The notes: generated by a model not told the origin, from the letters alone. A stretch of DNA of 64,000 nucleotides from Dendrobates tinctorius (GCF_039654945.1 NW_027361924.1:682001-746000), one strand, 5' to 3'. Counted from the first letter of the stretch, positions 35,713 to 64,000 are shown. Program-made: numbers and translations.

Positions 35713-36605
35713 GGCTATGTGCCCACGTAGCGTTTTAAACCGGACACTCAAAACCGGACTCCTTCCCAGAAAACGCGCTTTTTTTCCGCGCGATTTTACC
35801 GGGATTATGTTCGCGATTTTCGTGTGCGAAATTCAAGCACTTTCCAAGCGTTTTGAAGCATCGCTTGGAAAGTGATTGACAGGTTGGTCACACTCGTCAA
35901 ACATAGTGTTTGACAAGTGTGACCAGGTTTTTACTATTGAGGCCGCCTATGCGGCCTCAATAGTAAAAGATAGAATATTAAAAATGATTAAAAAAAATCG
36001 GGGTATATTCACCTTCCGACGTCCCGCGCAGTCTCAGCGGCGCTCCCGTTCCCAGTAATGCCTTGCGAGACCTGTGATGACGTTGGTCTCGCGTTGCTAT
36101 AGCGATCTCACGAGACCGCTAGAGTCACGCGAGACTACGTCATCACAGGGCCTTGCCGCAAGGCATTACTGGGAACGGGAGCGCCGCTGAGACTGCGCGG
36201 GACGTCGGAAGGTGAATATACCCCGATTTTTTATTTTTTTACAGGGGTATGGTACCCAGGGCCTGGAGGACAGTCTCCTCTCCTCCACACCGTGGGTACC
36301 AACCGCACATGAGACGCTTAACTTCGCGCATGGTGGGCATAGCCACATGCGGGAAGTAAGCGATTCTCATGCATTCCTAGAGGTGCGGAATCGCGGCAAT
36401 TCTTTGCGATTCCGCAAAAAGAATGAGCATGCTGTGTTTTTTTCCACAATGCGATTCCGCCGCGGAAAAAAGCGCAGCATTAGTACAGCATGTGCGGAAT
36501 GCCATAGGAATGCATGGTGTGGGTTCTGTACGAGTTTTTTTTAACCATTTCCGCACCAAAAATCGCGGCAAAAACGCTTAAAAGTCGCATCGTGGGCACA
36601 CAGCC
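35713..36605. mobile_element. PIF/Harbinger-type MITE with internal palindrome
   Basis: TIRs GGCTATGTGCCCACG / CGTGGGCACACAGCC with TAA duplicated. Inner hairpin at ~35985-36240. Same family as the elements at 60147 and 62873. Confidence 0.75.
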
Positions 36606-54200: not shown

Positions 54201-56849
54201 CCTTCACCTCCTCTGCTCCCCGGTAAGCAGCCTGCCTTTTCTTGTTTCCACACTTCGGTCATTTGGACCGCTGGGCGGGTCGTCTCCCGGGTTCTCTCTG
54301 GCACAATTGCGCAGTTTTGATATGTTGATACATATGTTATTTACTATGTAAGAATCCTTCCACATGTCATTGATTCATTTATGTTCAGTGTCCATTGGAC
54401 TTGCACATTGACCCCTCTGGATGGTTTTTTTTTTTTTTTTTTTGGCGCTCTGGACATGTACAACTATGTACAATACACATTTAATTGAGTATGCCATATT
54501 TGACTATCTTTTACCATTAGACACATGTCTGTTATGTGCAATGCCCATGGGCTGACTGAACGTTGTGCCATGTAGATTTCGAGCACTGGTATCATTTTAT
54601 TTACCCTGTCCTTGTCTGTCCTGATTGTTGTATCATTGGGGCTTATCCCCCCTATTTTAGTCAACTTGTATACTTGTCAGCACTTGATGTGAGTATTAAT
54701 AAAATTTATACTTTTGCATATATTTTGTATCCGTTACTCCGTTTTCTCCTTTTTAAGAACCCACACAAGAGGCTCAGGTAGTGCAGCTCATCCAGGATGG
54801 CACATCAATGCGAGCTGTTGCAAGAAGGTTTGCTGTGTCTGTCAGCGTAGTGTCCAGAGGCTGGAGGCACTACCAGGAGACAGGCCAGTACATGAAGAGA
54901 CGTGGAGGGGGCCGTGGGAGGGCAAGAACCCAGAAACAGGACCGCTACCTCAGACTTTGTGTAAGGAGGAACAGGAGGAGCACTGCAAGAGCCCTGCAAA
55001 ATGACCTCCAGCAGGCCACAAATGTGCATGTGTCTGCACAAACGGTTACAGTAGAAACCGACTCCATGAGGATGGTACGGTATGAGGGGCCAACCTCCAC
55101 AGATCAGATGGGGGTTGTGCTCACAACCCAACACCGTGCAGGACGCTTGGCATTTGCCACAGAACACCAGGATTGGCAAATTCGTCACTGGCACCCTGTG
55201 CTCTTCACAGATAAAAGCAGGTTCACACTGAGCACTTATGACAGTCTGGAGATGCCGTGGAGAGCGATCTGCTGCCTGCAACATCCTTCAGCATGACCGG
55301 TTTGGTGGTGGGTCAGTAATGGTGTGGGGTGGCATTTATTTGGAGGACTGCACAGCCCTCCATGTGCTCGGCAAAGGTAGCCTGACTGCCATTAGGTACC
55401 AAGATGAGATCCTCAGACCCCTTGTGAGACCATATGCTGGTGCGGTTGGCCCTGGGTTCCTCCTAATGCAGGACAATGCCAGACCTCATGTGGCTTTAGT
55501 GTGTCAGCAGTTCTTGCAAGATGAAGGCATTGAAGCTATGGACTGGCCCGCCCGTTCCCCAGACCTGAATCCAATTGAGCATATCTGGGACATCATGTCT
55601 CGCTCCATCCACCAACGTCACATTGCACCAGACTGTCTAGTAGTTCGCGGATGCTTTAGTCCAGGTCTGGGAGGAGATCCCTCAGGAGAACATCTGCAAC
55701 CTCATCAAGAGCATGCCCAGGTGTTGTACAGTAGGGAGGTCATACACAATACTGAGCATCATTTTGACTTGTTTTGACTCCAAATCCAGGCCTCCATTGG
55801 TTAATAAATTTGATTTCCATTGGTGATTTTTATGTGATTTTGTTGTCATCACATTCAACTTTGTACAGAACAAAGTATTCAATGAGAATATTTCATTCAT
55901 TCAGATCTAGGATGTGTTATTTGAGTGTCCCCTTTATTCCTTTGAGCAGTGTATAAGTAATGCACCCAACCTCAATCGTCTGTATGCATGCTCACCACAC
56001 AACCTCCAAGACCTGTATGGATGCTCACCATGCAAGATTTGCTTAACAAAAAGCATGTTCAAGCACAATTAAAGATTTCTCAACATTTAGCCAACCCTGT
56101 TAAATACTGGTCGACTACAGTCTGGTCAGACAAGACCAAAATTGAATTATTTGGATGCAATTTTGGGAAACTGACATTTTGCGGTCACACTTGCACTTGT
56201 CATGGACCCCCCTCACCCAAACACCTGTTGACAGATCTTATATTTTTATTATGAGTTCTCCAATACTAGCGCAGCCTATTAACCCTCTGCAGCCTTGATC
56301 GTACAGCTCACATAACACCCTTATTACTACATTTCCCCTCATTTTCTCACCTTTTTAGCCATTGCAAAATGCATTTTCTGCAGAAGATGTGCCCGCAGGA
56401 GATCATGATGGGGCACCTGAGCACACCATGGCAGATGGAGCACAGTAGATCGTCATCTGGATTGTCTGTAAATATATCTAGATCGTATCCTCCTCCCTGA
56501 AAATTTGTAAGCATCAGGTCATTAATAAAAGGTCTGCGGCACTAGGAACACACTGACCACTTCAGAGCCACCCCACGCCCTTGTTCACAGGGACCTTACA
56601 ACCATGGTCATGACCTGGGTTGTCCCCGTAAAAGTTCAAGTACCCACTGGAGACCTTAAATGTCCCCTGGCACACATCACACCAGTACATACCATTGTAA
56701 TACATATGTACGCTCCACTGCCCCAGGGAATCTGTTACACTTACCACCGCCTGTCCCAGCGCAGCCATCCACCACTCAGCTCTTTCTAGATCCAGGTCAC
56801 ATTCATCACCCTGATCACGTGCAGCCGGCTGACCCGTCACATTCACCAT
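39283..56849 (-). CDS. rnf151: RING finger protein 151 (RING plus TRAF-type zinc finger)
   Basis: Exon 56496-56351 reads [48 protein letters not shown]. Exon 41267-41171 reads [33 protein letters not shown]. Exon 39657-39283 reads [16 protein letters not shown]..stop. An ATG-only first coding exon is a candidate at 56849-56847 (ATG|gtgaat) and is less certain. Syntenic with TBL3. Confidence 0.88.
40137..40462. mobile_element. Harbinger-type MITE
   Basis: TIRs GGGTGTGTGCACAC / GTGTGCACACACCC with a GCGGAT-rich interior. Confidence 0.7.
40607..40937. mobile_element. Harbinger-type MITE, same family, opposite orientation
   Basis: TIRs GGGTGTGTGCACACG / CGTGTGCACGCACCC with TAA/TTA flanks. Confidence 0.7.
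41514..42643 (+). mobile_element. 5'-truncated L2 LINE (ORF2 C-terminus and 3' UTR)
   Basis: Peptides [51 protein letters not shown], followed by the L2 3' tail and (ATT)n. Confidence 0.9.
44044..44101 (-). ncRNA. Minimal type I hammerhead ribozyme in Penelope pLTR (copy 1)
   Basis: Reverse complement of the motif at 49190-49247. Confidence 0.75.
45163..48171 (-). CDS. Penelope-like reverse transcriptase / GIY-YIG endonuclease, lacking ~36 N-terminal residues
   Basis: Uninterrupted 1002-aa ORF with [43 protein letters not shown] and [17 protein letters not shown] motifs. Confidence 0.93.
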   Translation of the reverse strand: MLKFRDLLRKRTRIWWNHEFLDKYIQNNLIPRGLRIQVFPSFPIQDDDFKAKWEELANVCSMGFLDLLKTQNKKTLTLLESEIEIIQLDLQKGLTGESLKKFNDELDVDLQKWAQETQATKTKKLKRDIQDKLTAHVYRWRHPPDRSRQLYRSMSRSRSRSTSIKSTVSVDDEASVQLSHPGGTLSSSSDPVTKRVVTRQSARKKTYTGRNFTDYSAGGLQVVNLSTHALTQPQLEVLSRGLTFSPTNPFNFFVALKDLHLFSRKLLLRKLHHKNISQESLTESEMEALRVLEDLLDEQTPPSRSKFPPHVLPKSTRFPPLSLSPAIDIFTKLVAEDFRKLPSRRKFDNLTWRQRKAISELQSLSGVVFKPADKGGNIVVWPTHMYEREAHRQLRNRNTYERLSYNPTASFSLSLQRILVRALEGGIITKTVFEGLMVRTPKTPTFYLLPKIHKDAVEPPGRPIVSGIEGLCDPVCKFLDFYLKPLVESLPSYIKDTTDVLTRVDGVLVDGHTFLVTADVESLYTCIDHTLGLDAVRLFLGMSDLDGPMCGLLLELLQFVLTHNFFVFKDQFYRQRCGTAMGAACAPSYANLFLGAWERSIFGDEGAPAASHVLCWHRYIDDVLFFWDGTLQQLGDFMAWLNANTFNIRLTFKYDLKTIDFLDVTLEIDDTRRIQTDVYRKPTSVNSLLHAESAHNTSTIRAVPVGQFLRMRRICSTEDGFERQARDLQTRFRNRGYSNRSIRKGYSRARATARRDLLYPRRDNTGRSAKSGGSAPIRFISTFNHEWEHMRSILAKHWAILGSEPSLGQVIGDRPLMTSRRCRNLRDFLVKSHYIATTTNPFGSTGPTRGCFPCGHCVACPNVLRCSSFQSSDGEKDFHIKQHISCSSTNVIYYATCGCPLIYVGLTSRELRVRVREHVRDIRAAKTVVDPTTLKTIPRHFRSSHDCDPGSFMVRGIECVHLGIRAGNYKKALAQREAKWIVALDTMTPKGLNESLSFSSFL
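49190..49247 (+). ncRNA. Minimal type I hammerhead ribozyme in Penelope pLTR (copy 2)
   Basis: CAACACTCCC-TTGATAA-A-GCGCCTG(TGG)CGGGCGC-GAAACGTACGTC-GGGTGTCGTTG. The core is the U3-A8 variant of CUGAnGA with stem II, GAAA, palindromic stem III and a GUC cleavage triplet ending at 49236. Confidence 0.78.
49942..53055 (+). CDS. Full-length Penelope-like (Neptune) reverse transcriptase / GIY-YIG endonuclease
   Basis: Intact ORF. Likely start is MDFRARD at 49942, just after the splice acceptor TTTTTCACAG (49924). Contains LIPRGLR, RT motifs (GTAMG, YIDD), a Cys-rich linker and GIY-YIG. Confidence 0.93.
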   Translation: MDFRARDTTWRAQLNDALQDSSGGDTGGCSGDMQAAMLKFRDLLRKRTRIWWNHEFLDKYIQNNLIPRGLRIQVFPSFPIQDDFKAKWEELANVCSMGFLDLLKTQNKKTLTLLESEIEIIQLDLQKGLTGESLKKFNDELDVDLQKWAQETQATKTKKLKRDIQDKLTAHVYRWRHPPDRSRQLYRSMSRSRSRSTSIKSTVSVDDEASVQLSHPGGTLSSSSDPVTKRVVTRQSARKKTYTGRNFTDYSAGGLQVVNLSTHALTQPQLEVLSRGLTFSPTNPFNFFVALKDLHLFSRKLLLRKLHHKNISQESLTESEMEALRVLEDLLDEQTPPSRSKFPPHVLPKSTRFPPLSLSPAIDIFTKLVAEDFRKLPSRRKFDNLTWRQRKAISELQSLSGVVFKPADKGGNIVVWPTHMYEREAHRQLRNRNTYERLSYNPTASFSLSLQRILVRALEGGIITKTVFEGLMVRTPKTPTFYLLPKIHKDAVEPPGRPIVSGIEGLCDPVCKFLDFYLKPLVESLPSYIKDTTDVLTRVDGVLVDGHTFLVTADVESLYTCIDHTLGLDAVRLFLGMSDLDGPMCGLLLELLQFVLTHNFFVFKDQFYRQRCGTAMGAACAPSYANLFLGAWERSIFGDEGAPAASHVLCWHRYIDDVLFFWDGTLQQLGDFMAWLNANTFNIRLTFKYDLKTIDFLDVTLEIDDTRRIQTDVYRKPTSVNSLLHAESAHNTSTIRAVPVGQFLRMRRICSTEDGFERQARDLQTRFRNRGYSNRSIRKGYSRARATARRDLLYPRRDNTGRSAKSGGSAPIRFISTFNHEWEHMRSILAKHWAILGSEPSLGQVIGDRPLMTSRRCRNLRDFLVKSHYIATTTNPFGSTGPTRGCFPCGHCVACPNVLRCSSFQSSDGEKDFHIKQHISCSSTNVIYYATCGCPLIYVGLTSRELRVRVREHVRDIRAAKTVVDPTTLKTIPRHFRSSHDCDPGSFMVRGIECVHLGIRAGNYKKALAQREAKWIVALDTMTPKGLNESLSFSSFL
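54137..54194 (+). ncRNA. Minimal type I hammerhead ribozyme in Penelope pLTR (copy 3)
   Basis: Identical to the motif at 49190-49247, with GUC ending at 54183. Confidence 0.78.
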
Positions 56850-58585: not shown

Positions 58586-59436
58586 GGGCCCCGTCACACA
58601 TAGCGACTCACCAGCGATCCCGACAACGATATCAACATGTCAGGATCACTGGTGAGCTGTTAAGACAGCTTCACCAGCGAACGGCATCGCTGTGTACTTT
58701 AACTACCAGCACGCAGATGCAGGGAGCTGGTAACTAAGGTACACATCAGGTTTCTAAGTGACACACATCCCTTAGGCTAGTTTCACATTTGCGTTTCAGG
58801 GCGCAGCAACGGCCTGTGCACGGCCGCCGCTAAGCCCCGCCCCCTCCGATAGCTCCGCCTCTGGGCACATGACGCTGCATGCGTCCCCTATCTTTACCAC
58901 TGGGGACGCAGGCCGTGCGCAGTATGCGTTTGGCGGCGTGCATCGTCCTTTTGACGGTGCGCCACCAAATTGCAACAGGTTGCGTTTGGCGCTGGTCGGC
59001 GCACCGTCAAAAGGACGCAGGCGCCACCAAAACGCATACTGCGCACGGCCTGCGTCCTCAGTGATAAAGATAGGGGACGCATGCAGCGTCATGCGCCCGG
59101 AGGTGGAGCTATCGGAGGGGTACGGCAGGGGCGGGGCTTAGCTGCTGCCATGAGCAGGCTGTCGCTGCGCCCTGAGACGCAAGTGTGAAACTAGCCTTGG
59201 AAACCCGATCTGTACCTTAGTTACCAGCTGATCGCTGGTCTCCCACCGGTCACACACAGCGATGCGTGCTGGCTAGTGGGAGACCAGCGATCAAAGATCT
59301 GTCCAGGGCTTTCCAACAGCGATCAGCGATACCGGCAGGGGGGCCGGTCGCTGGTAAGTGTCACACACAGCGATCTCGCTAGTGAGATCACGGTTGCGTC
59401 ACAAAACTTGTGACTCAGCTATGTGTGACGGGGCCC
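58586..59436. mobile_element. Harbinger-type MITE with a nested palindromic MITE (58775-59196)
   Basis: Outer TIRs GGGCCCCGTCACACATAGC / GCTATGTGTGACGGGGCCC with TTA TSD. Inner TIRs GGCTAGTTTCACA / TGTGAAACTAGCC form a near-perfect ~420-bp hairpin. Confidence 0.8.
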
Positions 59437-60146
59437 TTACACTCCAAATGTAACTTACCAGCAGGTGGAATAATGTCACAGCAGGTGTGATGCTGCCAGT
59501 CCCATCCCAGGCTGGTAGCAAGGGATGTTCACAATCTGCATACGCTGCCTCATTATCCCCAGAGTCCACAACATTGAAACCATGGAAGTGCAAGGGCTCC
59601 AAGATTTCACAAAATATTGGCAGAGCCCTTACACCAAACACCCATTCCTGCAAGCTTGGGATTTGCAGAATCGCACCTCTGCACACCCCCTCCTCTCAGT
59701 CCAATGCCTGCAGAATCACCCAACTCCTGCAACCCCCCCGTAAGCTACTTTTCAGACTATAAGCCACACCCACCATTTTTTCTTTTTTTAGGGGGGTTGA
59801 GGTGCATCTTACAGTAAAAAAATACTGTAAGTATAAAGCTATGAGCCCCCCCAAAATTGCTTTTATCTGATCTTCAAGTAACTCGACAGTTTGGAGCTTA
59901 AACATCTTACAAACAATACCACTTCCTCAATTTCCATAACCTACAACTTGTCCTTCTTGGTGTTGTAATTTCAATGTTCCGGCATGTATACAGGCAAAGG
60001 TTTTGGCAGAGATTGTTGTGGAGAAAAACCAACATGATGAACTTGTATATATTGTTATTTAGAGCAGATAAGTCTGCTGCCCATAGAGGACAACGGGCCT
60101 TATGGTAACTATGACCAGTAGCAGGTAATGAAAACTGCATCATTTA

Positions 60147-60685
60147 GGCCGAGTGCCCACATTGCAGAATTTTCCGCAATTCCCTGCCGTGGGTAAAACG
60201 CATGCAGAATTTGCATGCATTTTCCTGCAAAATACTAGCATTTTTAGCTTGGAAAGGTGATTGACAGGTTGGTCACACACAAGCATAGTGCTTGACAAGT
60301 GTGACCAACTTTTTACTATTGATGCTGCCTATGCAGCATCAATAGAAAAGATAGAATGTAAGAATAAAAAATAGGGATATACTCGCCTTCTGCCGGCCAG
60401 CTCCATTCCCAGGGATGCATTGCGACAATGACCTCAGATGACGTAGCGGTCACATGACCGTGGCGTCATCTGGGGTGATTCGCGCAATGCATCCCTGGGT
60501 ACGGAAGTTGCCAGCAGCGTGGCTGAGGGCTGACAGAAGGTGAGTATATCCCTATTTTTTATTTGAATTCTATTTTTTACAGAATTATGGTACCCAGGGC
60601 CTGGAGGACAGTCTCCTCTCCTCCAGACCCTGGGTACCATTCGCACATGAAGAGCTCACTTTACGCATGGTGGGCATAGCCGCGG
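60147..60685. mobile_element. Truncated MITE, family of 35713-36605
   Basis: Shares GATTGACAGGTTGGTCACAC and GGTACCCAGGGCCTGGAGGACAGTCTCCTC blocks. Confidence 0.7.
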
Positions 60686-61004
60686 TAAATCCTAATGCTC
60701 CTGTTATTCAGCCTTATAGATGTATGATGATGCACAGCTCCCCTCACACACAATAGGGTGCCTGCAGTCACCCCCACTACTGACAAAATAAACCTCACCT
60801 TGTTCCATTACCCCCAATGTGCAGTGTGTGAACTAAGACTCAGCACAGCAGCTACAATCTAGTCACATCATCGTACCTGCTGCACTGAGACTCCGTTGAA
60901 TGGTGGCTCCTGTTCCACCATTGAATTAATCTGAGGACCAAGGCCATATTGCCCAGGTCTGTTTTATGATATACTGAAATACATTTAAACCTTTATTGAC
61001 AAAT

Positions 61005-62036
61005 TCAAGTTTCATTAAAGACTGAATATTTACAGCGTTGCCCCTTATTTTTTAGGACTTCTGCAATTCTCTCAGGCATGCTGGATATCAGTTTCTGGGC
61101 CAAATCCTGAGTGATTGCAGCCCACTCTTCCCTAATCATTGCTTGGAGCTTATCAGAACTTAGGACTTTTTGTTTGGCCAGCTGCTTTTTGAGGATTGAC
61201 CACAGGTTCTCAATGGGATTAAGATCTGGAGAGTTTCCTGGCCATGAGCCCAGAACTGCAATGTTTTGCTCACTGAGCCACTTAGTCACCAGTTTTGCCC
61301 TGTGACATGGTGCATCATCATGCTGGAAAACATATTGGTCATCACCAAACTGTTCCTGGATGGTTGGGAGAAGTTGCTCTTGGAGGAGGGTTAGATACCA
61401 TTCTTTATTCATGGCTGGGGTCTGAGGAAAGATTGTAAGTGAGCCCACTCCCTTGGATGAAAAGCAACCCCACACATGAATGGTCCCAGAATTATTTACT
61501 GATGGCATGAAACAGGCCTCAGGGAAGCTCTCACCCCTTCTCTGAAGCATCATTCTTCCAGATACCCCTAACAGTCTAAAAGTCGCTTTATCAGAGAAAA
61601 TTACTTTCCCCCAGTCCGCTGCAGTCCAATCCCTGTACTTCCTGCAGAATGTCAGTCTGTCCTTTATGTTATTCTGGGAGAGAAGTGACTTCTTTGCTAC
61701 CCTTTTCGTCACTAACCCAGCCTCCAAAAGCCTTCTCCTCACTGTGCGAGCAGATGCACTGACCCCTGCCTGCTGCCATTCCAGAGCAAGCTCAGCACTG
61801 GTGTTAAACTGATCCTCTTGCTGAATCTTCTTTAGGAGACTGTCCTGGCACTTGCTAGTCTTTCTTGGGCGCCCTGAAGCCTTCTTCACAGCAATCGAAC
61901 CACTCTCTTTGAAGCTCTTGATGATCCGATAAACGGTTGATTTAGGGGCTATCGTAGAAGCGGCAATAGCTTTGATTGATAATCCCTTTTGATGCAAAGC
62001 AATAATGTCTGCACGTGTTTCCTTAGAGGTAACCAT
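61005..62036 (-). CDS. Intact Tc1-family (DD35E) transposase ORF, candidate domesticated gene
   Basis: ATG at 62036 (ACCATGG context). Paired-like HTH with GRPRKT; catalytic VIFSD, FQHD and SPDLNPIE with 35 residues between the second D and E. No stops or frameshifts. AATAAA at 60997-60992. Confidence 0.85.
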   Translation of the reverse strand: MVTSKETRADIIALHQKGLSIKAIAASTIAPKSTVYRIIKSFKESGSIAVKKASGRPRKTSKCQDSLLKKIQQEDQFNTSAELALEWQQAGVSASARTVRRRLLEAGLVTKRVAKKSLLSQNNIKDRLTFCRKYRDWTAADWGKVIFSDKATFRLLGVSGRMMLQRRGESFPEACFMPSVNNSGTIHVWGCFSSKGVGSLTIFPQTPAMNKEWYLTLLQEQLLPTIQEQFGDDQYVFQHDDAPCHRAKLVTKWLSEQNIAVLGSWPGNSPDLNPIENLWSILKKQLAKQKVLSSDKLQAMIREEWAAITQDLAQKLISSMPERIAEVLKNKGQRCKYSVFNET

Positions 62037-62549
62037 GGTTAACAAAAGACAATTTCAAGCTTCAGTACCATAGTTCAGTCTGCTCTTTTAAATTAATTAG
62101 CATGAAAGTGATATCAAGTGCCTTGTCCTAGTTAACACTTTCTCCAGCGTTAACAAGATCACTGGAATGATGTAAGCAGGTCATTTAGTGGCAGGGTTTA
62201 AAAATCATTAATGGAAAGGAAATGACTACATTTCTTTGTAATTTATCTTATCTCTCTTCAAAACAATCTGGCCACAAAAACAAAACCAAGCACCAAAAAC
62301 AAAACTTGTGTCAGCCTCAATACTTTTGGACACAACCGTATATTCCACCCCTGACAGGCTGCATTGTCACCGCATAATCAGTGTTATTAACTATCCATGA
62401 TGTTAGCGCCTCTGCCAGGTGATCACCGCAAATTTTTCTAGCTCAGCTTCCACAAGTGCAGCCCCGACAAGGTCTAAAATAAAGAAAACAAAAGGTTAAT
62501 CAGGTGCAGTCACACGACACATGCACACTCCATGTATGCACAGCCAGAC

Positions 62550-62681
62550 TAGTGTAGGAACACGGGTCTCATTACACACATATAGGTTATGGGTAATGAG
62601 CTAAATGCTCCCAATTCCTGTAGGCACAGTGATCTTACTAAAGGCTACGAAGAGGCCAGAAGTAATTTTCAGTTTGTGCCA
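62550..62681 (-). ncRNA. SNORA78: H/ACA box snoRNA, SNORA78 (ACA64) orthologue
   Basis: Hairpin 1 GGCACA..TGTGCC, H box ACAGGA, hairpin 2 GGGAGCA..CTCATTAC..GTAATGAG..TGTTCCT, then ACA plus 3 nt; 132 nt in total. The 5' pocket ACUGAAAAU / AGAUCA complements the 28S rRNA segment UGAUCU-UG-AUUUUCAGU (recalled, not searched). It lies ~76 nt upstream of a 3' splice site and has the same strand and order relative to RNF151/TBL3 as in human. Confidence 0.85.
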
Positions 62682-62872
62682 AAGTCACTATGCCAATATC
62701 CCCCAATACAAGTCATTCATCAGACTGCCAAGATCTCCACCTACAGACATTATGCCCCAAACATCCTACCTGTACGCTGACCCTGGGGCCCAGGCTATGC
62801 CATACAAACCTCCAGCCCCGGACGCATCACTACATATTACATATACACCACCCACACCAGCCTGCACCATTA

Positions 62873-63518
62873 GGCTATGTGCGCAAGTGCAGATTTTTCA
62901 AGGAATTTTCTGCAGCAGTTCCGCAGCTCCCGGCATCAGGAAATACGCGAAAAATCCACCTGCTGATCGACAGGTTGGTCACACTCATTTGACAAGTGAC
63001 CAACTTTTTACTATTGCGGCTGCCTAAGCATCAGTAGTAAAAACATATGTTAAAGATAAAAAAAAAAACACGGGATATTCTCACCTTCCGGCATCCCCAG
63101 GCCTCAGCAATGCTCCCGGTCCCAGCGATACTTGTGACAAAGACCTCTGATGACGTACGCTACGTCATCACAGGTCATTATCGCGTAAGGCATTGCTTGG
63201 AACGGGAGTTACCAGGAGCATCGCTGAAGCCTGGGGACATCGGAAGGCAAATTTATCACGATTTTTTCTTTTTTTTCCCCCAGGGATATGGTACCCAGGG
63301 CCTGGAGGACAGTCTCCTCCAGACCCCGGGTACCAGCCACACATTTTCCGCAAAAAGAATGAGCCTGCTGCGTATTTTTCCGTGATGCAATTTTGCCCCA
63401 GAAAAATACGCAGCATTAGCACAGCATGTGTGGAATACAATGGCTTGCTTATTTTATGCATTTTTGCAGCAAAAACACGCATAAAATCTGCAGGCATTCC
63501 AGACATGTGAACACAGCC
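62873..63518. mobile_element. Harbinger-type MITE, family of 35713-36605
   Basis: TTA|GGCTATGTG...CACAGCC|TTA with shared internal blocks. Confidence 0.75.
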
Positions 63519-63639
63519 TTACACTATATATATGCCCAGCCCACATTACACTGTATACCACCCACTCCAGAGTAGCCAATTACACTATATACCCCCCAGT
63601 CAATCCTGCACCACTACACTATATACACCAAACCCTGTA

Positions 63640-64000
63640 ACATTACACTATATACACCCCCCCACCCAGAGGAGCATAGTCTGCACCACTACACTATATA
63701 CACCCCCCCACCCAGAGGAGCATAGTCTACACCACTACACTATATACACCCCCCCACCCAGAGGAGCATAGTCTGCACCACTACACTATATACACCCCCC
63801 CACCCAGAGGAGCATAGTCTGCACCACTACACTATACACCCCCCCACCCAGAGGAGCATAGTCTACACCACTACACTATATACACCCCCCCACCCAGAGG
63901 AGCATAGTCTGCACCACTACACTATATATACCCCCCCACCCAGAGGAGCATAGTCTACACCACTACACTATATACACCCCCCCACCCAGAGGCGCATAGT
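63640..64000. repeat. ~46-bp minisatellite running off the window end
   Basis: Unit CACTACACTATATACACCCCCCCACCCAGAGGAGCATAGTCTGCAC. Confidence 0.92.

What the first reader, a model, noticed from the sequence alone, without database searches (positions are those of the whole stretch)
60990..62681. Intact DD35E transposase apparently captured as the terminal exon of the SNORA78 host gene (SNHG9 equivalent)
Seen on the minus strand, in order: an H/ACA snoRNA (62681-62550), a branch-like CTGATTAAC, a long pyrimidine tract and AG acceptor (62475-62474), ~130 nt of unique exon, a decayed Tc1 left end (TACGGTTGTGTCCAAAAGTATTGAG at ~62340), an uninterrupted 343-codon transposase with all three catalytic residues, and AATAAA 8 nt after the stop. 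No right TIR is visible. The other Tc1 copies here are frameshifted or fragmentary, whereas this one has eroded ends but a clean ORF. Known: SNORA78 is hosted by the lncRNA SNHG9, transcribed divergently from RPS2. Inference: an immobilised transposase kept open by selection and expressed from a broadly active snoRNA-host promoter, turning a non-coding host gene into a coding one, possibly as a DNA-binding repressor of related Tc1 elements.
Basis: partly seen in the sequence, partly recalled or inferred. Interest (0 to 1): 0.85.

Follow-up and report, generated by a model that had tools for sequence, protein, structure and literature searches.

The report
Transposase gene inside snoRNA host transcript
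In a frog, the spliced carrier RNA that releases the small nucleolar RNA SNORA78 also carries a complete but immobilised jumping-gene enzyme (a Traveler/Tc1 transposase); the same copy is transcribed at the same spot in a second species, and selection may be keeping it readable, though this is not proven.

Summary
Rfam finds ACA64 (=SNORA78) at 62550-62677(-). An intact 343-codon Tc1-type ORF lies at 61005-62036(-). Its left end is homologous to the family's inverted repeat, and no right repeat exists.

New here: contigs from four RNA-like public runs (three of the window's species, one of a second species) have zero depth over the snoRNA intron. They stop exactly at the predicted acceptor (62475/62472), continue into an upstream exon, and run through the whole ORF to at least 60621. 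The second species' contigs include the non-transposon flanks, so the insertion is orthologous and predates the split.

The element belongs to the Traveler (DD35E) family but sits on a long, lone branch. No protein above 75% identity exists among 5.8 billion.

Selection evidence is suggestive only:
- Between the two species there are 12 nonsynonymous and 8 synonymous changes (omega about 0.4, p about 0.1).
- The coding sequence differs by about 2-3% against 4% or more in the flanks.
- No stop was seen.
- Indels that could be located lie in the UTRs.

Against a coding role, there are eight upstream ATGs and several replacements at family-invariant residues.

Verdict: a real, expressed, immobilised transposase in the SNORA78 host gene's last exon. 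It is a credible but unproven domestication candidate. RPS2 synteny could not be checked.

The parts
62960..63037 (-). Upstream exon of the host transcript (inferred; 5' limit unknown, overlaps a MITE-like repeat)
   Evidence: RNA contigs that stop at 62475/62472 carry 18-78 further letters that do not match the adjacent intron (table 8). Depth reappears only in bin 62952-63103. For X2, 52 letters at depth 33 over a 152-nt bin predict 11.3, and 10.9 was observed. CAG|GTGGAT donor at 62960|62959. No joint row was shown, so the position is inferred.
62474..62959 (-). Intron of 486 nt that holds the snoRNA
   Evidence: Zero depth in all four runs across 62496-62951 (table 2). GT at 62959-62958 and AG at 62475-62474.
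62550..62677 (-). H/ACA snoRNA ACA64 = SNORA78
   Evidence: Rfam RF01225, 72.7 bits (gathering score 35), E 3.8e-13, model positions 1-128 of 128. H box ACAGGA, and ACA three nt from the 3' end. The 3' end lies 75 nt upstream of the acceptor.
62474..62503 (-). Branch-like CTGATTAAC, pyrimidine tract and AG acceptor
   Evidence: Sequence. Contigs of X2, X8 and X14 end at 62475 and the X19 contig at 62472 (table 8).
60621..62473 (-). Last exon seen in RNA (3' limit not defined)
   Evidence: The X2 contig of 1911 nt covers 60621-62475 with 2 other letters. X8, X14 and X19 tile the same span (table 8). Weaker coverage continues to about 59362 in organism A only.
62339..62473 (-). Non-transposon part of the exon leader (135 nt, with 3 upstream ATGs; ends in the TA target dinucleotide)
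   Evidence: No homology to family members. Present in organism B's contig up to the junction.
62293..62338 (-). Left inverted-repeat homologue of a Traveler element, with a mutated tip (CGGTT where the family has CAGTC)
   Evidence: 76-85% identity to the reverse complement of the right repeats of L002/L004. 32 of 46 positions match L001's left repeat. Family motif taken from PMC7093834.
62037..62292 (-). Transposon 5' UTR, decayed by indels (about 8 W-specific events, including a 32-nt deletion near 62204), with 5 upstream ATGs
   Evidence: Alignment to four family members. uATG list.
61005..62036 (-). Intact 343-codon DD35E transposase ORF (ACCATGG start; stop shifted 6 codons beyond the family's stop)
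   Evidence: One in-frame 3-nt deletion relative to the family, and no stop or frameshift.
60959..61004 (-). Remnant of the transposon 3' UTR with the family's own AATAAA (60997-60992). Homology ends here and the right repeat is missing
60621..60958 (-). Transcribed non-transposon 3' flank, also present in organism B's contig (from 60654)
   Evidence: table 8 (records 15, 22, 31, 5). 14 differences in 351 nt between the two species (table 3).

Best explanation
This is the frog counterpart of a SNHG9-type snoRNA host gene. Its intron yields SNORA78. Its last exon contains, in sense orientation, an old one-ended copy of a Traveler (DD35E, Tc1/mariner) transposon.

Shown: the host promoter and splicing deliver a mature RNA that carries the complete transposase ORF behind a 437-nt leader in the last exon. 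The copy cannot move, because its left tip is mutated and its right end is gone. It sits at the same locus and is transcribed in two species.

Inferred: the ORF has been kept open by moderate purifying selection, strongest on the N-terminal DNA-binding half. If so, the gene makes both a snoRNA and a stand-alone transposase-derived DNA-binding protein. Many changes at residues that active transposases conserve suggest the protein no longer needs to cut DNA. What it does (for example binding Traveler ends or other sites) is not known.
For: Structure and expression:
- Searches give the snoRNA, the ORF, the zero-depth intron, contigs ending at the acceptor and carrying upstream-exon letters, and a 1911-nt contig across the ORF.

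Orthology:
- Organism B's contigs include both non-transposon flanks.

Immobility:
- No right inverted repeat.

Lone lineage:
- Best protein identity is 72-75% for the whole protein and for each half. Nothing turned up in metagenomes.
- Depth over the W-type 5' UTR equals the locus's own contig.
- In the tree, W sits inside the Traveler clade (support 100/100) on a branch 4.4 times the median length.

Constraint between species A and B:
- 8 synonymous and 12 nonsynonymous changes, no stop.
- pS 3.5-3.8%, about equal to the 3' flank at 4.0%, while pN is 1.5-1.6%.
- Nonsynonymous sites against the 3' flank give Fisher p 0.019.
- The DNA-binding half has 3 N to 5 S, the catalytic half 9 N to 3 S.
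- No net indel in 61134-61589, judged from the from_end values.

Constraint on the long branch:
- omega about 0.3 with dS about 0.4.
- One in-frame indel in 1029 nt of coding sequence, against about 8 indel events in about 300 nt of 5' UTR.
- 5 of 12 lost CpGs went CGN to AGR, which keeps arginine.
Against: - The N:S test alone is not significant (p 0.10-0.16).
- The list of differences is capped, and paralogue contigs may hide roughly 260 nt of coding sequence, so the contrast between coding sequence and flanks could be weaker.
- Organism B's ORF could not be read in full. 61005-61134 and 61589-62036 are unchecked for indels.
- Eight upstream ATGs precede the start, and the last uORF ends 2 nt before it.
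- 35 W-derived replacements fall at positions conserved in both the family and its outgroups.
- Since the split there have been radical changes at invariant sites: Q72R, L164P and T201R in B, and E150K next to catalytic D149 in A.
- The long-branch statistics mix time spent as a mobile element with time at this locus.
- The copy was picked because it is intact (ascertainment), and genome-wide copy number was not measured.
Confidence: 0.5

Rival explanations
1. Neutral passenger. The host RNA is an ordinary non-coding snoRNA carrier, like mammalian SNHG9, whose last exon happens to include a dead transposon. The ORF is still open by luck and modest age, and nothing is translated.
For: - lncRNA exons often contain transposon sequence (general knowledge).
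- Eight upstream ATGs in the leader.
- omega of 0.42 is not significantly below 1.
- The catalytic half shows 9 N to 3 S, close to neutral.
- Radical changes at invariant residues in both lineages.
- 35 derived changes at deeply conserved sites, more than in a frameshifted dead copy, which has 24.
- The finding was selected for intactness in a transposon-rich genome.
Against: - The nonsynonymous rate is below both the synonymous and the flank rates.
- No stop among 20 substitutions, and no indel located in the coding sequence, while the UTRs carry several.
- If the relaxed part of the long branch were fully neutral (about 6% divergence), an open 1029-nt frame would be expected in roughly 1 in 10,000 copies. 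This is my estimate from the 4.6% of random changes that create a stop and an assumed indel-to-substitution ratio of about 0.1-0.15, which the UTR gaps suggest but do not measure.
Confidence: 0.38
2. Constraint acts on the RNA rather than on a protein. The exon sequence would be conserved as part of a functional lncRNA or for processing of the host transcript.
For: Mammalian Snhg9 has reported lncRNA functions (PMC10688608). The coding sequence diverges less than the flanks.
Against: The synonymous rate (3.5-3.8%) equals the flank rate (4.0%), and only nonsynonymous sites are slowed. That is the signature of protein-level constraint, not RNA-level constraint. CGN to AGR changes preserve arginine.
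Confidence: 0.05
3. A member of a still-mobile or recently active subfamily with many near-identical copies. The RNA signal would come from those copies or from the element's own promoter.
For: Canonical Traveler copies are transcribed in both species: contigs match conserved parts of the coding sequence and then diverge, for example at 62049 (table 7). Traveler can reach thousands of copies in frogs (PMC7093834).
Against: - Contigs are continuous from the unique flanks and the splice junction through the ORF, with 0-2 differences in 1.8 kb.
- No right end.
- No protein above 75% identity anywhere.
- Only 77-83% nt identity to canonical copies.
Confidence: 0.04

Closest known systems
Traveler (TR), the DD35E family of Tc1/mariner transposons (Zong et al. 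2020, PMC7093834)
   Same: - 35 residues between the second D and the E.
- A transposase of about 340 aa with paired-like HTHs, GRPR and a DDE domain.
- An element of about 1.5 kb, found in ray-finned fish and frogs.
- The window protein sits inside the clade of fish and frog family members.
- A canonical Ranitomeya copy (L001:23553-25131) has TA-CAGTC ends.
   Different: - The window copy is a lone long branch at 67-73% aa identity.
- Its left tip reads CGGTT rather than CAGTC or CAGCC.
- It has no right repeat, a 6-codon C-terminal extension, and many changes at family-invariant residues.
- The family is described as a very recent invader, whereas this copy looks old.
Mammalian SNHG9, the non-coding host gene of SNORA78
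   Same: SNORA78 lies in the intron between the host exons (PMC10688608). The two-exon layout around the snoRNA is the same here.
   Different: The mammalian host is non-coding. Here the last exon carries a complete transposase ORF. Neighbourhood with RPS2 could not be checked in this window.
Domesticated Tc1/mariner-pogo transposases and host-transposase fusion genes (e.g. SETMAR; Cosby et al., 10.1101/2020.05.07.082677; PMC7386202)
   Same: An immobile copy at a fixed locus shared between species, transcribed from a host promoter through host splice sites, with its DNA-binding domain retained.
   Different: - No fusion: the ORF starts at its own ATG, 437 nt inside the last exon, and encodes the whole transposase including the catalytic triad.
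- The host is a snoRNA carrier.
- Selection is not yet demonstrated.
Single-copy, repeat-less Traveler copy with a 344-aa coding capacity reported in a squamate (PMC7093834)
   Same: A lone Traveler-derived ORF that keeps coding capacity without the terminal hallmarks.
   Different: It is in a different host and was not examined for expression or selection. I found no evidence that the two are related, and no squamate protein was among the close hits.

Membership tests
Traveler (DD35E) Tc1/mariner | Catalytic triad with 35 residues between the second D and the E | tested here: met
   D149, D240 and E276; residues 241-275 make 35. Family definition from PMC7093834.
Traveler (DD35E) Tc1/mariner | N-terminal paired-like HTH domains with GRPR, then a DDE domain, about 340 aa in all | tested here: met
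   Pfam HTH_23/HTH_29 (4-59), HTH_Tnp_Tc3_2 (70-136) and DDE_3 (145-297). SGRPRK at 54-59. 343 aa.
Traveler (DD35E) Tc1/mariner | Groups with family transposases in a tree | tested here: met
   Clade of W plus 13 fish and frog members, support 100/100 against the next cluster. W's place within the clade is unresolved, and its branch is 0.34 against a median of 0.077. I had no sequence labelled TR by the paper. Identification rests on matching features and a Salmo salar member.
Traveler (DD35E) Tc1/mariner | Two short terminal inverted repeats ending CAGTC/CAGCC, flanked by TA | tested here: not met
   Left end is TA then CGGTT, 70-85% like the family repeat. The right end is absent (shuffle test). 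It is therefore a derivative of the family, not an intact element.
Domesticated transposase (usual working criteria) | Immobile: lacks a functional pair of ends | tested here: met
Domesticated transposase (usual working criteria) | Single copy in the genome | tested here: inconclusive
   No sibling in the window, in 5.8 billion proteins or in the transcriptome contigs over the W-type UTR. The genome itself could not be searched.
Domesticated transposase (usual working criteria) | Orthologous copies at the same locus in different species | tested here: met
   Organism B's contigs cover 60654-61380 and 61355-62472, including both non-transposon flanks and the same splice junction. Only two species were available.
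Domesticated transposase (usual working criteria) | Purifying selection on the ORF after immobilisation | tested here: inconclusive
   12 N to 8 S, omega about 0.42, p 0.10-0.16. Nonsynonymous sites against the 3' flank give p 0.019. The list of differences is incomplete.
Domesticated transposase (usual working criteria) | Transcribed and translated | tested here: inconclusive
   Transcription and splicing were seen in runs from four studies. Translation cannot be tested here, and 8 uATGs argue for low efficiency.
SNHG9-type snoRNA host gene | SNORA78/ACA64 inside a spliced intron of the host transcript | tested here: met
SNHG9-type snoRNA host gene | Lies next to RPS2, transcribed divergently from it | tested here: inconclusive
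No RPS2 exon in 62700-64000. The window ends too early.

The most novel reading that the evidence does not exclude
A vertebrate snoRNA carrier gene has become bifunctional. Its intron gives SNORA78, and its spliced RNA is the mRNA of a stand-alone domesticated Traveler transposase. The protein's DNA-binding half is under purifying selection while its catalytic half drifts. This would make a host DNA-binding factor (for instance a binder or repressor of Traveler ends) driven by a housekeeping snoRNA-host promoter. It would also be the first domestication reported for this transposon family.
Probability: 0.35. Interest if true: 0.7.

Novelty: new member of a known kind. Interest (0 to 1): 0.55.

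Why it matters
Domestication of Tc1-proper transposases is rarely documented in vertebrates. Searches of the open literature held here found none for the Traveler family and none involving a snoRNA host gene.

If selection and translation are confirmed, this locus would show a simple route from a non-coding carrier RNA to a protein-coding gene. A whole transposon lands in the last exon, which avoids nonsense-mediated decay, and borrows a broadly active promoter.

Traveler copies are also transcribed in these frogs, so the locus could allow a test of whether an immobilised transposase regulates its mobile relatives.

If neutrality is confirmed instead, it is an ordinary transposon-bearing lncRNA exon.

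Tried and rejected
- Right inverted repeat: local alignment of the canonical right repeat, and of the reverse complement of W's own left repeat, against 61004-60300. Scores were no better than shuffles. A MAFFT hint of similarity near 60820-60870 was rejected on that basis.
- Orthologues or siblings by protein search with the whole protein, the N-terminal half and the C-terminal half. Nothing exceeded 75% identity.
- The exact protein is not on record in the assembly index.
- Metagenome scan: no relative.
- Earlier findings searched by sequence: blank, which means nothing.
- The R. imitator protein P0023 is a chimeric gene model over an unrelated canonical copy with a frameshift, not an orthologue.
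- Synteny: no RPS2 exon and no RING-like exon found in the window.
- I tried to delimit which coding positions were hidden by paralogue contigs in organism B. My 90%-over-40-nt mask (564 nt) was clearly too wide, because it covered places where only the locus's own contig was present. I therefore give a range instead.
- W as a basal lineage that merely keeps ancestral residues: rejected. Only 8 of 49 W-unique residues match the outgroups and 35 are derived.
- Fusion with the upstream exon: rejected. The frame upstream of the start codon is closed within a few codons, 437 nt short of the acceptor.

Full report
**What is in the sequence**

On the minus strand, Rfam finds one RNA family in the whole window. 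It is ACA64, at 62550-62677, scoring 72.7 bits against a gathering score of 35, full length, with an H box and a terminal ACA. ACA64 is the older name of SNORA78 (PMC12289781). In mouse, Snora78 is flanked by the Snhg9 exons and lies near Rps2 (PMC10688608).

Seventy-five nt downstream of the snoRNA come CTGATTAAC, a pyrimidine tract and AG at 62475-62474.

An uninterrupted 343-codon ORF runs from an ACCATGG start at 62036 to a TGA at 61007-61005. Pfam places paired-like HTH domains at 4-59, HTH_Tnp_Tc3_2 at 70-136 and DDE_3 at 145-297. D149, D240 and E276 are present, with 35 residues between the last two.

The window holds no second copy at the DNA level. There is only one distant Tc1-like fragment, at 54772-55639.

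**Which transposon it is**

The nearest proteins among 5.8 billion are fish Tc1-like transposases of 337-349 aa at 67-73% identity, plus part of a Ranitomeya imitator gene model.

I fetched DNA for four relatives:
- L001, a genomic R. imitator copy
- L002 and L004, Logan contigs
- L003, from Umbra

L001:23553-25131 is a complete 1.58-kb element with TA-CAGTC ends.

These features match the Traveler (TR) family described by Zong et al. 2020 (PMC7093834): 35-residue spacing, about 340 aa, about 1.5 kb, CAGTC tips, and a distribution in fish plus frogs. In a maximum-likelihood tree the window protein falls inside that clade (support 100/100), but on a terminal branch of 0.34 against a median of 0.077.

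**State of the copy**

- Left end: TA at 62340-62339 followed by CGGTTGTGTCC..., 70-85% identical to family repeats, with the tip mutated.
- 5' UTR: homologous from about 62210 to the ATG, with about eight W-specific indels including a 32-nt deletion.
- Coding sequence: 77-83% nt identity to the relatives, with a single in-frame 3-nt deletion. The family's stop has mutated, adding six codons.
- 3' UTR: keeps the family's own GTCAATAAA signal. Homology ends near 60959. Nothing downstream resembles a right repeat better than shuffled sequence does.

The copy is therefore one-ended and cannot be excised by the usual mechanism.

**Transcription and splicing**

It also returned four runs of a second species (organism B) holding 29%.

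I laid three A runs from three studies and one B run on 59000-63550.
- All four have zero depth over 62496-62951, which is the snoRNA intron. They therefore behave as RNA.
- Their long contigs stop at 62475 (A) or 62472 (B) and carry 18-78 further letters that do not match the intron.
- The two extra matching bases are expected if the upstream exon ends in AG.
- Depth returns only in bin 62952-63103. For X2, 52 letters at depth 33 predict 11.3 in that bin, and 10.9 was observed.
- A CAG|GTGGAT donor sits at 62960|62959.

I therefore place the upstream exon at 62960 and beyond, inside a MITE-like repeat. This junction is inferred, because no joint row was printed.

One 1911-nt A contig covers 60621-62475 with two differences. 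The spliced RNA therefore carries the whole ORF and runs at least 380 nt past the AATAAA. Contig depths fall after about 61000 in two A runs, which hints at partial use of that signal, but contigs cannot show RNA ends.

**Orthology**

Organism B's contigs cover 60654-61380 and 61355-62472. That span takes in the non-transposon 3' flank, the ORF, the leader and the same junction. The insertion therefore predates the split of the two species.

**Selection since the split**

Table 3 lists 20 B-specific differences inside 61005-61968 and 14 in the 351-nt 3' flank.
- Of the 20, 8 are synonymous, 12 are nonsynonymous and none makes a stop.
- With 227 synonymous and 802 nonsynonymous sites, omega is about 0.42.
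- A binomial test against the neutral expectation gives p 0.10-0.16.
- The synonymous rate (3.5-3.8%) equals the flank rate (4.0%). The nonsynonymous rate is 1.5-1.6%, and Fisher against the 3' flank gives p 0.019.
- The DNA-binding part (1-136) has 3 N to 5 S (ratio 0.18). The rest has 9 N to 3 S (ratio 0.83). The difference between the two parts is not significant, p 0.17.
- From the from_end values, B has no net indel in 61134-61589.
- B is net +33 letters somewhere in 61589-62229. That fits retention of the 32 nt that A lacks in the 5' UTR, but I could not place it.

Caveats on these figures:
- The table is capped at 40 rows.
- 30 of the 46 differences in B's second contig are unlisted. 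I think they lie beyond 61968, because ties seem to be kept in ascending order, but this is a guess.
- High-depth paralogue contigs may hide roughly 260 nt of coding sequence, where a 1.5% share falls under the 10% listing threshold.
- Allowing for this, coding divergence is 1.9-3.0% against 4.0-5.6% in non-coding exon sequence.

Polarising with the relatives shows changes in both lineages. Some are radical or hit invariant residues: Q72R, L164P and T201R in B, and E150K next to D149 in A.

**The long branch**

- By three-taxon decomposition the W branch has dN 0.13, dS 0.40-0.44 and omega about 0.3. The canonical branches have omega of about 0.15-0.2, and L004 sits almost at the node.
- Of 49 residues unique to W at well-conserved columns, 35 are derived (the family agrees with its outgroups) and only 8 could be ancestral. 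A dead, frameshifted copy has 24 derived.
- Only 4 of 16 ancestral CpGs survive. Five were lost by CGN to AGR, which keeps arginine.

These figures show protein-level constraint along the branch, looser than in active elements. They cannot separate time spent as a mobile element from time at this locus. UTR length also varies among active Traveler elements, so the excess of UTR indels is not decisive either.

**Against a coding role**

The 437-nt leader inside the last exon has eight ATGs opening uORFs of 1-18 codons. Three are in fair context, and the last uORF ends 2 nt before the main ATG. The ORF is not fused to the upstream exon.

**Judgement**

Solid:
- the gene structure
- the expression
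- the immobility
- the shared locus in two species

That selection keeps the ORF open is the more likely reading, at about one in two. A neutral passenger in a lncRNA exon is close behind, at about two in five.

No paper in the library links a snoRNA host gene to a transposase, or reports a domesticated Traveler.

I did not test that note.

Noticed in passing
window 60258-60648, 62964-63344 and 35863-36344: Three copies of one palindromic MITE-like repeat, about 68-69% alike. Two of them flank the snoRNA-transposase unit in direct orientation. The inferred upstream exon of the host transcript lies inside the copy at 62964-63344, so part of the host gene's 5' region may itself be repeat-derived.
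   Followed up: partly
window 62229, and between 60705 and 60763: All four RNA runs, including three of the window's own species, read A where the window has C at 62229. All carry 4 extra letters between 60705 and 60763. This is a private allele or a small assembly error in the window.
   Followed up: no
window 59362-60257: In organism A, low-depth RNA contigs continue for more than a kilobase downstream of the last exon as defined here. In organism B, 59608-59911 has zero depth. This may be read-through or a longer 3' UTR in one species only.
   Followed up: no
window 61182-62049 (conserved parts of the ORF): Very deep short contigs (thousands) from other, canonical Traveler copies match conserved coding segments and then diverge (e.g. 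at 62049, 61189, 61246). Canonical Traveler elements are therefore transcribed in both frog species.
   Followed up: partly
L001:5001-24886 (Ranitomeya imitator, GCA_958301615.1): The annotated 538-aa protein P0023 is a chimeric gene model. It stitches fragments of different Tc1-like copies across 20 kb, and its last part is a canonical Traveler copy with a frameshift near codon 290.
   Followed up: partly
window 63580-64000: Tandem repeat of a unit of roughly 60 bp running to the end of the window, just upstream of the host gene region.
   Followed up: no
window 54772-55639 (+): Fragment of an unrelated Tc1-like transposase (26-28% identity to the ORF, in two pieces), next to the Penelope insertions noted by the scan.
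   Followed up: no
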